A stretch of 64,000 nt of DNA from NCBI GenBank assembly GCA_965649765.1, contig OZ287748.1:106330001-106394000 (forward strand), written 5' to 3'. This DNA comes from Bispira polyomma (taxonomy: Eukaryota). The notes below the pieces were generated by a model. The model was not told where the DNA came from and did no database searches. It was given only the letters and a program-made list of their open reading frames with translations. How positions within the stretch are numbered: position 1 is the stretch's first letter; each line of letters starts with the position of its first letter. A program made the position numbers and the translations under genes. Shown in pieces: positions 56,704-62,539 of this stretch.

Positions 56704-57736
56704 TCAATGTACATCATTTGTGTGTTTTTCACATTTCACAGCACAGTCTTTTCCCTCTCTTTGATGACTACATGTCTGCAAACAGTGAACAAGAGAATCC
56801 ATCAGGCGCTGATTACTTGATGTCTGATTGCTGGGCACACGTGCCTTAGTACCAAGTACACAGAGGTAGCCCTGACAAGGAGACACCTGACTTCTGACAA
56901 CCTGCCACGGATGGACCGAGCGCTTGTTACCTTTTGGGGTAGGCTTAGCTCTGTTGTTCCTGTAGATCATGGGATCGAGCCAGCGCTTACTTCTGTAGGT
57001 CATGGGATCGAGCCATTTCTTTGCTCCTCCTTTACCCTCCTCCGTCCCAGATGGCACAAGCGCATTAACAGCATCATGTCCTGGCTTGCCAAACAAAAGC
57101 TTATGGAGCCAGTCATTTTGAGTGAGAGGACTGTTGTCTATTGAAGAGACTACAGGAGAAGTCCATACTGTGTCGTCTGTCTCCCTCTTACCATACATTG
57201 TAGGGTCTACCCAAACTCTCTTCCCTGCTTTGGCCCCTCCATTCTTGCCACCATAGACGGTTGGATCGATCCAGTCTCTCTTTCCATACATTGTGGGATC
57301 CACCCAAAGCCTCTTGCCCCCTGTGTACAGGGTAGGATCTATCCAGGCTGTCAGATCATTAGCATCCTCTTCCCTTTTTCCGTATATCCCAGCATTCATC
57401 AGAACTCGCTTGCCCTGTCCATTCTTATCGTTGTAAATGGTGGGATCCAACCAGTCCCGCTTACGAGCCAGTTTATGGCAGGTGTGTTGACATTTTACCA
57501 GGATGTCTCCATCCATTCCTTCACACCCCTGTTGGACACACTGACCAGGGTTTGTAGACTGGGGGAACATGGAGTAGTAGCCGGTATCCAGCCACCTCTT
57601 GTCATGGATGACCTCATCACAGAATGACATCACACACACCATAAATTGTGGGAAGGTAGCCAGCTGTGGACAGTTTTGGCCGGTACAGTCTTGGAGGAGG
57701 GAGTTCTCTGTTGGTAGACTGACTTGATGGGAAACA
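56704..57736 (-). CDS. Neuropeptide-type precursor, coding exon 3 (WxDPxxY peptides plus Cys modules)
   Basis: Open frame of 343 codons to TGA at 56706-56704. It has 11 KR/RKR/KK sites, six G-KR amidation signals and seven W[LIV]DP[TM]xY motifs. It is preceded by the polypyrimidine acceptor tttgtttttactctttccAG (AG at 57738-57737, phase 2), so the first 33 aa of the listed ORF are probably intronic. Confidence 0.92.
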
Positions 57737-58226
57737 CTGGAAAGAGTAAAAACAAATATTAGATTTAAAACCCTGAATACATTAACCCTTTCAATGATGA
57801 TGCTGTTGGCAGCAGTCAAGAACATTTGTAACACCAGAACCTTTGTCTATCGGCAAGCAGTAGACACCACCAATATTTGATTTTCAATCAGTTTCTAGCA
57901 ATAAGAAATTATTAGTAAACCAGACTCCATTGTTGAAAAAGTTTATGCTGCTAAAGAATGCCAGTTAGTCTGCGGTGTAGTTTTTTTAGTGACTCCAGCT
58001 ATTTGCAATGAATTAACCAAAACATTTTCTTCAGTTCCCGGCAAAGGTTTTTTCTTTGGGTCAAAAACATTCAAAATAAAAAGGACTTAAGTTGTGAAAA
58101 GAGTTGCTGTAAAGACGAGAAGAGGCATAATAAAGTGAATATAAATATGAGAGACAGTGGGAACAGTAAGAAAGACAAAATTGCAAAACTAAGAAATTAT
58201 AAAGAACTCAGCACCTGAGAAATTGT

Positions 58227-58481
58227 GGGGCCGCGGTGGCCTAGTGGTTAGCAAGCATTGCGCTTCACAATCACTGGTCTCTCACCTCTGGGCGGCGTAA
58301 GTTCGAATCCCATCGATGCCTATGTGGGAAAGGTGGTAGTTCCTTACTGTGGGCCGCTGGTTTCAGAGCAGAACCTTGATCAACTGTATGCAGTGTTTCC
58401 TCCAGCGTTTCCAACTACCCATCCCAATATAACCTAATCAGGTACTAGAGTGGACATTAAATATCCAAATTAAAAAAAAAC
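58227..58481 (+). mobile_element. SINE family A in intron 2 of the precursor gene (antisense to the gene)
   Basis: Full length with A tail; TSD cctgagaaat(t/g)gt. Confidence 0.93.
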
Positions 58482-60269
58482 CCTGAGAAATGGTCAAAAG
58501 GGGGCTAAATACAGGTTAAAGGGCTTGAATTAGTGAGGAAACAATTAGGAAAATGCAGAGGGTTGAGAAGGGATGAAAAGATGACTGAGATGGTGAGAAT
58601 TAAAAAAATGTCCTGAACACAATTTCTTTTTGACTTCCAACATGTGGACAGAGTTTGTCATGTAAACTGTGCACGAAACCATGGTCGAAAGTTAAGGTAC
58701 TGTAGCATCTTCCATTTTCGCTAATAAAAATAAAGGATTTGATAAAATATTGCCTTAATTACTTTTACAATTGCCATTTCGTATAATCCTAATAATAGGA
58801 GGTACATTACTGCTTATTAGTGGGAAACTTTAAAAATATAACCAATTGTTTCCGAGTCCACATTTAAGTTCTGCTTTTTGCTAGAAGGCGCTAGTGTACA
58901 CTCTATGGTCACAACATTTGGCAGATCTAGCCGGCTGGCGACAGTCCTTTTATGAACAGAATTTTGTGGTACTCCTGCCATGTGTGCGCACATTGACACA
59001 TGATATATTCTGAGATGCACACTGCTAACTAGGATGTTGGGTACGACAACATCTTACTTATTTTAGAATGTGTATATGTGTGACATTGAATACATTTCTA
59101 TGATGTAAAAAGCGTGTATTAATTACTCTTTCTGGAGTTACAATTTTCAAACTTATAGCTTCTGTAACTTCATTGAATTCCTTCAGGAAAGACAGAAGTA
59201 GGTTGAGCTCATTTAATTTATGCCAATGAAGACAGACAGAAAATCTGTGGCACTCGGTAAAGAAACCATTACAAAATGAAAACATCAAACGAATACTGAC
59301 ACGCCCAAAATTTAAGTAACAACACATGCATTATTGTAACTTAGTGCTGCATTATGTGGCACAGTAAGGTATTAGTGAGCTTACTAGGTGTACAGGGTAT
59401 AAACTCTAACGAACTGAATATTAGTTAGAGCACATTAAAGTGCCTTATGAGATATTTTAGGATTTTAGCTACTTGTATGTCTTTTTCATTCTTTTAATGG
59501 TGCCCTTTTCATTTAACTATAAATTTACATCATATTTCACACATTTAGTCAAATTGTAAGTTTAAATAACTTTACTTACGGTCACCATAACATATGTTCA
59601 CCTTAACTTTAACTCTTAAGGTTCCTTAAATTTAGTTTACATGAACACTTTTACATTCTTATCTAAGGTTAACCGTATGTCAGTTTTCGTAAACTTAAAG
59701 TCATTATGGTTAACTCAAATTCTAAGGTGGCCTTATATTTTATTTAGAGAAAAGGCTTAATATCAACGGACTATTGACACCGAAATAATCTGCCACATCT
59801 ACGGCCACCACTCCCTGCCACTTTTGAGATTAGCCTGTCAACATATTTGGGGTTGAAAACCAGCCATACTAATGGTATAACAGGAAAATGCTGTTCGAAT
59901 ATGAAGGGTATTCTCCTTTCTTTAACAAAGGGCATTCTCCTGTCTTTAATAAAACCAAAAAAAATTGTGTAAAATCAACTGGATAAATAAAACTTACTTG
60001 TGTGAAATAAAAAAAGGAATGTCAGACAAAAATGGGGCTGGTATATTGCCAAAATGCTGGATAAATCCGAGTTTGGATAAAATACAAGTTTCATGCCTAA
60101 ATCTTTACTGCATTGGTGCATATTTGTTATTAAATTGTTAGATTGTAACCAGGGTGACAACAGTCGTACTAACTAGAAAGACGCCCCTTGACAGAGGTTA
60201 TTACTGATGCGTCTTTTTCAAGGTCATCCCTGACGAACATCGAAGTCCATTTGATATATTAGGGATACA

Positions 60270-60415
60270 CTGGGGCCATGGTGGCTGGTGGTTAAAAGCG
60301 CCTGTCAGGTACTTGCCAAAGGCCAGTGGTTTCAGTGCTTTGTCGCTGGAAATTCATACACCATTAAATCTGGATGTTGTAAGGTTATCAACTAAGCTGT
60401 TAAAAGCACTCAATT
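60270..60415 (+). mobile_element. SINE family B fragment (intron 2)
   Basis: ggggccatggtggctggtggtta...tgtcaggtacttgccaaaggccagtggttt. Confidence 0.6.
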
Positions 60416-60802
60416 AAATTTTAATTGATACATTTAGCTTTGTGAAAAATTCTAACCTACTGACGATTGTGTGTCCTTAGAACAACCATGATCAAATCTG
60501 ATTTAATGTTAAAATCCACAGCAATAATGTATAATTTTGGGTGATGCAAAATAAAATGTTTGAAATATATGAGACGAGTGGTTTGTTGAACAGGCTTCAT
60601 TAAAGAATATTAGCAAATTGACAATCTAATCTAGTCCTTTTTAAGCCCTAAATCTTTCCTCTAGGAGAACTCAAAACGCCATAACATTCTAGTCATAGAA
60701 AAATATATAATATTAGACTCTAGCCAAGACGGTTAAAAAAGATTAGCATTCAACCAATGGACAGAATGGCTATGTTGGAGAGTTGAGACTTAAGATGTTT
60801 AC

Positions 60803-61118: not shown

Positions 61119-61369
61119 CTAAAACACGAAATGCAAATATAGTATGAAAAGCGGAAAAACCCATTGTGACATCATCAGTCATGTGACCTCCTCAACCACA
61201 TTGTCACTGTAACGTCATCAGTCATCTGATCTCCCCAGCCATATCGTCTGGTGATGTCATCAGTCATGTGACCTCCACAGCCATATTGTCGTAATGTTGG
61301 CTTATTTTAAAAAAGGAATTTATTTGGGTTTTACGTCTCTTACCTTATTTTAAAAAAAGGAATTTATTT

Positions 61370-61570
61370 GGGTTTTAAGTCTCTTCAAACAACATTGGTC
61401 ATACCGTGACGGCCAGGATTAGTGTTGGGGAAAACCAGTGCTGATGTACTGTAAACCAACGATCAAAGCCAATTACCTGACAAACTTTCTCACATGAAGA
61501 AGGGATATCTGGGATTTGATCTCCAGATGTGAGAGGTCAGTGATTTTAATGCAGACACTTGTGACTGTTA
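61370..61570 (-). mobile_element. SINE family B (intron 1)
   Basis: gggttttaagtctcttcaaac...aaaccaacgatc...attacctgacaaactt...gagaggtcagtgatt. Confidence 0.6.
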
Positions 61571-61789
61571 CTCTGGAATATGACATTGCAACATGATGAG
61601 GAGGCGTCCGAAATAGAGAATAGAATATGGGACGGTGGCATCTGTGTAATTTTGTTAAAGTGAAATACTAATTGTTTTAACATTGATCAATTACCCACCA
61701 TGGTTTTACTTTTGCATTTTAGGTCGTATTGATTGTTATCAACCTCCAGTTCTAATTTATATAGTGTTTTAGGACTTTTATTACATTTT

Positions 61790-62010
61790 AGTGTGCTGCG
61801 GTTGCCTAATGGTTAGAAGTGCCTTCTTTACAATCACTGGCCTCTCACCATTGCGGGTTCAAATCCCATTTTGTTCCTTCAGGTAGGTAAGTCTGTCAGG
61901 TACTTGCCATAGGTCGGTGGTTTAGCACTGGCTTCAGCACTGGTTTCTTCCACCATTGAATCTGTCTGTCATGAAATGACCCTAAACTGTTGGGAGCCTA
62001 AAAAAAAAAA
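61790..62010 (+). mobile_element. SINE family B (intron 1)
   Basis: ggttgcctaatggttag (A box), gggttcaaatccc (B box), ctgtcaggtacttgccataggtcggtggttt, A tail. Confidence 0.75.
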
Positions 62011-62511
62011 ATCCCATCACACAGCTAATTCAATCACATTTTGCAGACAAAAAATTACGATTCATTAAGATAGCAAAAGTTACCCATGTTGCAGTTACAA
62101 ATATAACATGAATATACGCTGCTAATTTTCGCCCACTATCCACAACAGGTAAACTATACATACAACAAAATTATCACGTCTGAAAATGATGGCGCTACAG
62201 GTAAAGATATTCATGTGACTAATTCTAACATAACTAGCTTGAGTCATCGATTATGATTGGCTGCTGTATTTAATAATAATTAGAAACCCTGTATTTCTCA
62301 AATTATTCAGGACTGGTGTTAACGTTCCATTTATTATATATTTTGAAATTAAAAAAGTACTTGTATTGATTACCACAAAAATTTACACAGCTTAATATAT
62401 ATTTTTGCCAATATATTTGATGTTCACCAGACAAGTTCATTAGAGAAAAAAGTGTAATTAGTTTCCACTGAGAAATTCATTTCAACAGTCTCATTCTGCC
62501 AAAGTCCTTAC

Positions 62512-62539
62512 CTTGTGCTAGTTTTGTTTTTGGCGCCAT
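62512..62539 (-). CDS. Neuropeptide precursor coding exon 1 (MAPKTKLAQ)
   Basis: ATG in context aaataATGG, 28 coding nt, then donor G|GTAAGG (phase 1, fits exon 2). It supplies a basic n-region and has a TATA box about 150 nt upstream. Confidence 0.72.

What the first reader, a model, noticed from the sequence alone, without database searches (positions are those of the whole stretch)
56704..62539. Apparently undescribed neuropeptide precursor producing W-x-D-P-x-x-Y(amide) peptides
Seen in sequence: a 377-aa spliced ORF with a signal peptide and 11 dibasic sites. Predicted products are DWLDPTIYNDKNGQa, VLMNAGIYa, EEDANDLTAWIDPTLYTGa, LWVDPTMYa, DWIDPTVYGGKNGGAKAa, VWVDPTMYa, WLDPMTYRS and WLDPMIYRNN..., plus a WLDTGYY-headed Cys peptide. 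Established: signal peptide, KR sites and G-KR are the hallmark of PC1/PC2-, CPE- and PAM-processed neuropeptide precursors. Inference: the motif matches none of the molluscan families I recall (FMRFa, MIP, pedal peptide, Wx3Yamide, LFRYa, NKY, luqin). The N-terminal WLD recalls the Platynereis WLD peptides, so it may be an unrecognised relative or a new ligand family with an orphan receptor.
Basis: partly seen in the sequence, partly recalled or inferred. Interest (0 to 1): 0.92.

Follow-up and report, generated by a model that had tools for sequence, protein, structure and literature searches.

The report
Worm relative of WLD neuropeptide gene
This is a real three-exon gene for a secreted precursor that would be cut into many small W-x-D-P-x-x-Y peptides, but the genome is a worm's, not a mollusc's, and the gene is most likely a relative of the known Platynereis 'WLD' neuropeptide, not a new family.

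Summary
On the minus strand, three exons (62539-62512, 61118-61046, 57736-56704) with canonical splice sites give exactly 377 codons. W[LIV]Dxxx[FY] occurs 8 times, against at most 1 in 20,000 shuffles.

Two homologues exist in other assemblies. P0001 (E 1e-96) keeps the 73-nt exon 2 and both intron phases. Its codon-position identities (0.66, 0.75, 0.42) indicate purifying selection on the protein.

The interpretation needs correcting:
- **Taxon.** The genome is most likely an annelid. It has erythrocruorin-linker genes and no detectable mollusc haemocyanin, and earlier notes of this scan agree.
- **Family.** The published Platynereis WLD precursor has the same layout:
  - a signal peptide;
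  - a four-Cys module, then KR-WLD a few residues later;
  - an array of W[LIV]Dxxx[FY] peptides;
  - a spacer, then a last W-V-D-P-x-x-Y copy;
  - a Cys-rich tail.

The peptides here differ in being mostly amidated.

Interest is moderate to low: it extends a family published as Platynereis-only.

The parts
62689..62696 (-). TATAAAAA, a possible TATA box about 150 nt upstream of the ATG
   Evidence: Read directly from the sequence. Weak: a consensus match only, and a 6-codon upstream ORF (ATG at 62621) lies in between.
62512..62539 (-). Exon 1, coding part: ATG in a good context (A at -3, G at +4), MAPKTKLAQ plus one base, donor CAAG|GTAAGG
   Evidence: In the homologue L001 only a 12-nt match (CCAAAAACAAAA), with GTAAGT at a similar offset, was found, and it has no ATG. 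The exon is plausible but the start codon is not conserved.
61046..61118 (-). Exon 2, 73 nt: hydrophobic core of the signal peptide (G)GCLMVCLLFRCDVWMAEALDTTI(G)
   Evidence: Acceptor TTTTAG|G and donor TTGG|GTGAGT. L001 8764..8836 is also 73 nt with the same two phases and aligns without gaps, while the flanks do not align.
56704..57736 (-). Exon 3: 343 codons plus stop, holding all peptides and all 14 Cys
   Evidence: The acceptor CTTTCCAG|T is at the same codon phase as in L001 (starts at 10030). P0001 matches at E 1e-96.
57619..57687 (-). N-terminal Cys module 1: C-x4-C-x11-C-x4-C, followed 6 residues later by KR-WLD
   Evidence: Cys spacing, and identical in P0001. Platynereis WLD has C-x2-C-x10-C-x4-C, then 7 residues, then KR-WLD (read).
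57466..57594 (-). WLDTGYY-headed 43-residue peptide containing Cys module 2 (C-x4-C-x10-C-x3-C)
   Evidence: It is conserved in P0001. In L002 the open frame upstream of P0002's ATG adds the first Cys, giving the same C-x4-C-x10-C-x3-C module preceded by GYY.
57190..57456 (-). Array of six Gly-KR-terminated (amidated) peptides, five of them with W[LIV]DPTxY; includes LWVDPTMY-NH2 and VWVDPTMY-NH2
   Evidence: WVDPTVYGKR also occurs in P0001 and P0002.
57022..57183 (-). 54-residue spacer between the array and the last two copies; contains the conserved NDWLHKLLFGK
56926..57015 (-). Two non-amidated copies, WLDPMTYRS and WLDPMIYRNN(R)AKPTPKGN. KRWLDPM-x-Y and RAK are invariant in all three species (A2), the longest invariant run in the protein.
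   Evidence: Their position matches that of KKKWVDPLNYGLDRKR in Platynereis WLD.
56707..56919 (-). C-terminal Cys-rich tail: C-x4-C-x25-C-x3-C-x8-C-x3-C
   Evidence: It is the only part of the AlphaFold model with pLDDT near 60, predicted as a helix-turn-helix at residues 307-337. The Platynereis tail is C-x4-C-x10-C-x4-C.
56639..56644 (-). ATTAAA, a possible polyadenylation signal 60 nt after the stop
   Evidence: Read. A consensus match only.

Best explanation
This is a single-copy, three-exon gene of an annelid that encodes a 377-residue secreted proneuropeptide of the WLD type. WLD is the family so far described only from Platynereis dumerilii.

Inferred processing:
- The signal peptide (exons 1-2) sends the protein into the secretory pathway.
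- Prohormone convertases cut at the 11 KR/RKR/KK sites.
- A carboxypeptidase trims the basic residues.
- Peptidylglycine alpha-amidating monooxygenase converts the six Gly-ended products into amides.

Expected products are two copies of xWVDPTMY-NH2, longer W[LI]DPTxY-containing amides, two non-amidated WLDPMxYR.. peptides, and disulfide-containing N- and C-terminal peptides.

By analogy with Platynereis WLD, the peptides would be released by sensory-neurosecretory cells and act on a still unknown receptor. In Platynereis larvae WLD slows ciliary beating and increases arrests.

Shown here: the gene structure, the motifs and the conservation. Inferred: the processing, the family link and the function.
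For: Gene and precursor:
- Canonical splice sites give exactly 377 codons.
- Exon 2 length (73 nt) and both intron phases are conserved in L001.
- P0001 matches at E 1e-96 and P0002 at E 5e-4, rising to 9e-60 when scored with a profile that includes P0002 itself.
- Identity by codon position is 0.66, 0.75 and 0.42. Of 150 identical residues that have more than one codon, 80 use different codons, so selection acts on the protein.
- There are 8 W[LIV]Dxxx[FY] copies, against at most 1 in 20,000 shuffles. There are 11 dibasic sites and 6 Gly-KR sites.
- The protein language model's nearest clusters are multi-copy neuropeptide precursors (tachykinin, FLP-1), with weak scores.
- The gene is single copy in its genome. 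P0002 finds only this locus there.

Annelid origin:
- Eryth_link_C scores above its cut-off and no mollusc haemocyanin domain was found.
- Earlier notes of this scan call the genome an annelid.

WLD link, from the Platynereis precursor printed:
- a signal peptide;
- C-x2-C-x10-C-x4-C, then 7 residues, then KR-WLD (here C-x4-C-x11-C-x4-C, 6 residues, KR-WLD);
- 19 W[LIV]Dxxx F copies between dibasic sites;
- a spacer, then KKK-WVDPLNY-GLD-RKR (here KK-WLDPMTY-RS-KR);
- about 8 residues further on, a tail C-x4-C-x10-C-x4-C (here a six-Cys tail ending C-x3-C-x8-C-x3-C).

Among the Platynereis precursors in those supplements, only WLD carries a dibasic-flanked WVDP.
Against: - No statistical alignment with Platynereis WLD was possible.
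- Three database searches did not return a WLD protein. Either it is absent from those libraries or it scores below threshold.
- Platynereis peptides are non-amidated, with acidic tails and Phe. Here most are amidated, with Pro and Tyr.
- Here there are two N-terminal Cys modules and six tail Cys, against one module and four Cys in Platynereis.
- There is no RNA, peptide or expression evidence for this gene.
- The signal peptide was not scored by a predictor, and the exon-1 ATG is not conserved.
Confidence: 0.65

Rival explanations
1. It is a genuinely separate, unnamed neuropeptide family (W-x-D-P-x-x-Y-amide) with its own orphan receptor. On this view it resembles WLD only by convergence on a short W-L-D head and on Cys-rich flanks, which many precursors have.
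For: None of the searched papers or supplements contains these peptides. HMMER searches do not retrieve any named family. Amidation and the DP core are absent from the main Platynereis WLD peptides.
Against: The match to WLD is in the order of parts, not only in three letters: a Cys module, 6-7 residues, KR-WLD, the array, a spacer, W[LV]DPxxY, basic residues, then the Cys tail. Platynereis itself has a WVDPLNY copy at the corresponding position. The genome is an annelid, so a WLD orthologue is expected and no other candidate was found.
Confidence: 0.2
2. It is a derived member of the wider 'x-L-D-...' peptide families: pedal peptide/orcokinin and FCAP, or allatostatin-A/buccalin. Their peptides also start with [WML]-L-D right after dibasic sites.
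For: Nemertean allatostatin-A precursors contain KRLDPMMYGVGLGKK and KRDVDPTMYSGN. Nemertean pedal peptide 2 and scaphopod FCAP/pedal peptides contain KRWLDHVSGSLL, KKWLDTLGG.. and KKWLDTVGDGMF.
Against: The defining C-terminal parts are missing: there is no [YF]xFG[LI]-amide, no G-x-x-F/L tail of pedal peptides, and no HGW-amide of FCAP. The precursors shown have no Cys modules. The similarity covers only 3-6 residues.
Confidence: 0.07
3. It is not a neuropeptide gene at all. It could be a secreted Cys-rich repeat protein with another role, such as a pheromone, a glandular product or an antimicrobial, or a locus that is not expressed in neurons.
For: There are no expression data. The AlphaFold model is uninformative (pLDDT 36). 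The Cys modules could be the functional parts.
Against: Six Gly-dibasic amidation sites and short repeated peptides flanked by KR are typical of neuropeptide or peptide-hormone precursors. These sites and peptides are conserved across three species.
Confidence: 0.08

Closest known systems
Platynereis dumerilii WLD proneuropeptide (UniProt F8UKU1; Conzelmann et al. 2011, 2013; PMC3890597)
   Same: Both are annelid. Both have a signal peptide and an N-terminal four-Cys module followed 6-7 residues later by KR-WLD. Both have many W-[LIV]-D-x3-[FY] copies, most starting directly after dibasic sites (here four of the eight have one extra residue before W). Both then have a spacer and a W-[LV]-D-P-x-x-Y copy next to a C-terminal Cys-rich tail.
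   Different: In Platynereis, 19 of the 20 copies are WLDNSQF-like, non-amidated and have acidic tails. Here there are 8 copies with a D-P core and Tyr, and six products end in Gly-KR (amides). There is also a second N-terminal Cys module fused to a WLDTGYY head, and six tail Cys instead of four. No alignment statistics were obtained.
Bivalve Wx3Yamide precursors (Stewart et al. 2014; Zhang et al. 2018)
   Same: Short amidated peptides with a Trp and a C-terminal Tyr-amide.
   Different: Wx3Yamide peptides are ..W[SNH]IAY-amide, with W and Y three residues apart and no Asp-Pro. Here the spacing is five, with an invariant Asp. That family is molluscan.
Allatostatin-A/buccalin and pedal peptide/orcokinin/FCAP precursors of spiralians
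   Same: Multi-copy precursors whose peptides often begin x-L-D after a dibasic site. Some nemertean allatostatin-A copies read LDPMMY...
   Different: Their defining C-terminal motifs are absent here, and they lack the flanking Cys modules.

Membership tests
WLD proneuropeptide (Platynereis type) | N-terminal signal peptide | tested here: inconclusive
   The spliced exons 1-2 read MAPKTKLAQ-G-GCLMVCLLFRCDVWMAEA.., which is a basic start followed by a hydrophobic core. No predictor was available, and the joined model was not sent to any tool. The exon-1 ATG is not conserved in L001.
WLD proneuropeptide (Platynereis type) | Many copies of W-[LIV]-D-x3-[FY] placed directly after dibasic cleavage sites | tested here: met
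   There are 8 copies in exon 3, 10 in P0001 and 2 in P0002. At most 1 copy appears in 20,000 shuffles. In 4 of the 8 copies one extra residue (D, L, V or A) precedes W.
WLD proneuropeptide (Platynereis type) | Four-Cys module before the first copy, followed within a few residues by KR-WLD | tested here: met
   Here: C-x4-C-x11-C-x4-C, 6 residues, KR-WLD. Platynereis: C-x2-C-x10-C-x4-C, 7 residues, KR-WLD (read). The comparison was by eye, not by alignment.
WLD proneuropeptide (Platynereis type) | Last copy of W-[LV]-D-P-x-x-Y type, set apart by a spacer and followed by a Cys-rich C-terminal tail | tested here: met
   Here: KK-WLDPMTY-RS-KR-WLDPMIY.., then a tail with 6 Cys. Platynereis: KKK-WVDPLNY-GLD-RKR, then C-x4-C-x10-C-x4-C.
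WLD proneuropeptide (Platynereis type) | Free-acid peptides with acidic C-terminal extension (WLDNSQFKDED, confirmed by mass spectrometry in Platynereis) | tested here: not met
   Six products end in Gly before KR, so they are predicted amides, and there are no acidic tails. This may be a trait of the Platynereis array and not of the family as a whole.
WLD proneuropeptide (Platynereis type) | Statistically significant sequence or profile similarity to the Platynereis precursor | not testable with these tools
   The Platynereis sequence was available only as printed text in a supplement and had no reference, so the alignment step was left out. Searches of three protein libraries returned no WLD protein.
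WLD proneuropeptide (Platynereis type) | Expression in apical-organ sensory-neurosecretory cells; peptide slows cilia | not testable with these tools
   The Platynereis data are in PMC5747525 and PMC7017327.
Amidated multi-copy neuropeptide precursor (generic) | Repeated short peptides bounded by dibasic sites, with Gly before the site, conserved between species | tested here: met
   There are 11 dibasic sites and 6 Gly-KR sites. WVDP[TSN]xY-G-KR is present in all three species. The codon-position identities fit protein-level constraint.
Wx3Yamide (bivalves) | C-terminal W-x3-Y-amide | tested here: not met
   Published peptides are SNKWSIAY-, LRQGWNIAY- and QQGWHIAY-amide. Here W and Y are five residues apart.
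Allatostatin-A / buccalin | C-terminal [YF]-x-F-G-[LI]-amide or G-G-L-amide | tested here: not met
   No product ends this way. The resemblance is limited to L-D-P-x-x-Y in some nemertean copies.

The most novel reading that the evidence does not exclude
The three proteins form a separate, so far unnamed neuropeptide family (W-x-D-P-x-x-Y-amide peptides between Cys-rich flanks). It would be present in at least three species, would only converge on WLD, and would signal through its own orphan receptor.
Probability: 0.2. Interest if true: 0.55.

Novelty: new member of a known kind. Interest (0 to 1): 0.33.

Why it matters
WLD was published as a Platynereis-only neuropeptide (PMC3890597). It has a known larval effect, slowing cilia and causing sinking, but no receptor is named in the papers I read.

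If this gene and its two homologues are WLD relatives, two things follow. The family is older and wider than reported. The part shared by all members is the W-[LV]-D-P-x-x-Y peptide next to the Cys-rich tail, not the WLDNSQF array, and that points to which peptide to use in receptor screens.

It is a useful annotation for annelid neuropeptide catalogues. It is not a new kind of signalling system.

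Tried and rejected
- **Pfam.** Nothing found for exon 3.
- **Wx3Yamide.** Rejected because the W-to-Y spacing differs.
- **Full-text searches for peptide strings.** Only unrelated papers came up.
- **Supplements.** De Oliveira 2019, Thiel 2021 and the Urechis paper hold no W[LIV]DP peptides of this type.
- **More relatives.** The searches gave only P0001 and P0002.
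  - P0003 is a multi-copy LSMDPFNL-amide precursor. I judge its match to be repeat and low-complexity similarity.
  - P0004 is a large, apparently bacterial repeat protein that I take to be unrelated.
  - P0005 has E 6.2 and is not significant.
- **Accession numbers.** The two source records appear in no paper.
- **Structure.** AlphaFold2 on exon 3 with 3 sequences gave mean pLDDT 36 and pTM 0.19. Only the tail hairpin reached about 60, so no fold search was run.
- **ESM Atlas.** The nearest clusters are tachykinin and FLP-1 precursors at 0.76 and 0.75, which are leads only.
- **Possible paralogue on C2.** A pattern hit there is a 36-bp x12 minisatellite that reads KKWLDPH[RH][HY]GQG. All frames are open, W is lost in two units, and there is no signal peptide or Cys module, so I rejected it as a gene.
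- **Exon-1 counterpart in L001.** Only a 12-nt match plus a donor site was found, with no ATG, so this stays open.
- The joined 377-aa model was not searched or folded. Exon 3 was used by reference, and exons 1-2 were compared as DNA only.

Full report
**What is there.** The longest ORF of the whole 64-kb window lies on the minus strand at 56704-57834. Its coding part starts at a strong acceptor (CTTTCCAG|T, exon start 57736) and runs for 343 codons to a TGA at 56706-56704.

Upstream lie two more exons:
- Exon 2 is 73 nt (61118-61046; acceptor TTTTAG|G, donor TTGG|GTGAGT).
- Exon 1 is 28 nt of coding sequence (62539-62512; ATG with A at -3 and G at +4, donor CAAG|GTAAGG).

Read exon by exon, the N-terminus is MAPKTKLAQ, a split Gly, then GCLMVCLLFRCDVWMAEALDTTI. 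That is a basic start, a hydrophobic core and a small-residue stretch (AEA), so a signal peptide is plausible.

**The peptides.** W[LIV]Dxxx[FY] occurs 8 times. In 20,000 residue shuffles only 143 had even one copy, and none had two. In the six-frame translation of the window, the narrower W[LIV]D[PT]xx[YF] is confined to exon 3, apart from one isolated hit with no basic flanks. The 14 Cys form spaced modules:
- two before the array: C-x4-C-x11-C-x4-C and C-x4-C-x10-C-x3-C;
- a tail: C-x4-C-x25-C-x3-C-x8-C-x3-C.

**Is it a real, constrained gene?** Two homologues exist in public assemblies.
- P0001 is 367 aa, from an ENA assembly, and matches at E 1e-96 with 54% identity in the alignment.
- P0002 is 191 aa, from a Logan contig, and matches at E 5e-4 alone or 9e-60 with a profile that includes it.

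In the P0001 locus the exon-3 acceptor sits at the same codon phase. An upstream exon of exactly 73 nt with the same two phases encodes ACMLLCLLLTCEPCLTKDIDGIL. It aligns to the window's exon 2 without gaps, while the flanks do not align.

Identity between the two species by codon position is 0.66, 0.75 and 0.42. Of 150 identical residues that could use another codon, 80 do. This is the signature of selection on the protein.

The exon-1 ATG is not conserved. The only counterpart found is a 12-nt match followed by GTAAGT, without an ATG. In that species translation probably starts in exon 2, so the exact start here is uncertain.

L002 is genomic DNA with an acceptor before GYYEQKRR, followed by the same C-x4-C-x10-C-x3-C module. 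Its gene has only one WVDPTVY-G-KR and one KR-WLDPMSY. Three elements are shared by all three proteins: an amidated WVDPxxY peptide, the WLDPMxY peptide and the Cys-rich tail.

The gene is single copy in its genome, and P0002 finds only this locus there. I did not try another route.

Earlier notes of this scan on other pieces of the same genome call it an annelid. I tested this in part. The Pfam domain of the erythrocruorin linker (PF16915) hits three exons on contig 7, all above the curated cut-off. To my knowledge this domain comes from the giant extracellular haemoglobin of annelids. The mollusc haemocyanin beta-sandwich domain (PF14830) gives no hit, although that search rang in no control genome either, so it shows little on its own. 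An annelid is the most likely source.

**What family?**
- Pfam finds nothing.
- Text searches for the peptide strings return only unrelated papers.
- The supplements of the large mollusc, nemertean/brachiopod/phoronid and Urechis surveys contain no such peptides.

The Platynereis WLD precursor is printed in a supplement of Conzelmann et al. 2013 (PMC3890597). It reads, in order:
- a signal peptide;
- a four-Cys module (C-x2-C-x10-C-x4-C);
- seven residues, then KR-WLDNSQF;
- 19 W[LIV]Dxxx F copies in all, between KK/KR sites;
- a spacer;
- KKK-WVDPLNY-GLD-RKR;
- eight residues, then C-x4-C-x10-C-x4-C.

The window's protein has the same parts in the same order:
- a Cys module;
- six residues, then KR-WLD;
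- an array of W[LIV]D copies;
- a spacer;
- KK-WLDPMTY-RS-KR-WLDPMIY;
- basic sites, then the Cys tail.

The last Platynereis copy has the W-V-D-P-x-x-Y form that is typical here. It sits at the position of the copies that are most conserved among my three proteins. Of the Platynereis precursors in those supplements, only WLD has a dibasic-flanked WVDP.

I therefore read the gene as a WLD-family member. In this lineage the amplified array consists of amidated W[VI]DPTxY peptides. In Platynereis it consists of free-acid WLDNSQF peptides.

This link rests on architecture read by eye. The protein libraries did not return it.

**How it probably works.** The steps are inferred from the established pathway for such precursors: signal-peptide cleavage, cutting at dibasic sites by prohormone convertases, trimming by a carboxypeptidase, and amidation of Gly-ended products.

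In Platynereis, WLD is made in apical-organ sensory-neurosecretory cells. It lowers ciliary beat frequency and increases arrests. The papers I read name no receptor for it. A similar neurosecretory role is the best guess here, but it is untested.

The Cys modules are predicted to be helical, and the tail forms a helix-turn-helix. The AlphaFold model is poor (mean pLDDT 36, about 60 only for residues 307-337), so I ran no fold search.

**Rivals.**
- A separate family that only converges on WLD remains possible (about 0.2), because no statistics support the link.
- A relation to pedal peptide/FCAP or allatostatin-A rests on 3-6 residues. It lacks their defining C-termini and cannot account for the Cys modules.
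- A non-neuronal secreted protein cannot be excluded without expression data.
- A pattern search of the genome for adjacent W-x-D-x3-[FY] copies found no Platynereis-like array. It found only a 36-bp minisatellite on another contig that happens to read KKWLDPH[RH][HY]GQG. All frames are open, W is lost in two units and there is no gene context, so I take it for coincidence.

**Verdict.** The precursor call is well supported by sequence and conservation, but it lacks RNA or peptide proof. The 'new molluscan family' reading is not supported. The genome is most likely an annelid, and the gene most likely extends the WLD family beyond Platynereis, where it was reported as species-specific. That makes it a new member of a known kind, of moderate to low interest.

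Noticed in passing
L007 1392-1826 (G000 contig C2, about 107812288-107812722): A 36-bp unit is repeated 12 times (92% matches), and one frame reads KKWLDPH[RH][HY]GQG. This recalls the WLDP..Y-G-KK pattern. However, all frames are open, two units have G instead of W, and there is no signal peptide or Cys module nearby. Probably coincidence.
   Followed up: partly
window 61172-61290 and 61301-61385: Two short tandem repeats (42 bp x2.8 and 44 bp x2) lie in intron 1, the nearer one 54 nt upstream of the exon-2 acceptor. These units do not include the junction.
   Followed up: no
window 50000-50427: A 50-bp unit is repeated 8.6 times at 100% identity. The scan started at 50000, so the array may begin earlier.
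   Followed up: no
window 16070-16994 (+): Two overlapping ORFs give weak reverse-transcriptase (RVT_1) matches below Pfam's cut-off. This is a decayed retroelement.
   Followed up: partly
window 58300-58402 (intron 2) and L001 3100-3201: A 105-nt stretch is 74% identical between the window's intron 2 and the region upstream of the homologue's gene. Similar ORF text (..ITGLSPL..) also occurs at window 61791-61886. This is probably a dispersed repeat shared by both species.
   Followed up: no
P0003 (606 aa, from the representative library): A multi-copy precursor with about 25 near-copies of RLSMDPFNLGKR (LSMDPFNL-amide) and a signal peptide. Its origin is unknown, and it was pulled in by repeat similarity only.
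   Followed up: no
window 62601-62621 (-): A six-codon upstream ORF (ATG CCT ATT ACA CTG GAA TAA) lies between the TATA-like box and the main ATG.
   Followed up: no
L004, L005 (G000 contig C7, about 48557639-48568253): Three exons match the erythrocruorin-linker C-terminal domain above Pfam's cut-off, on both strands within 11 kb. This suggests at least two linker genes side by side.
   Followed up: no
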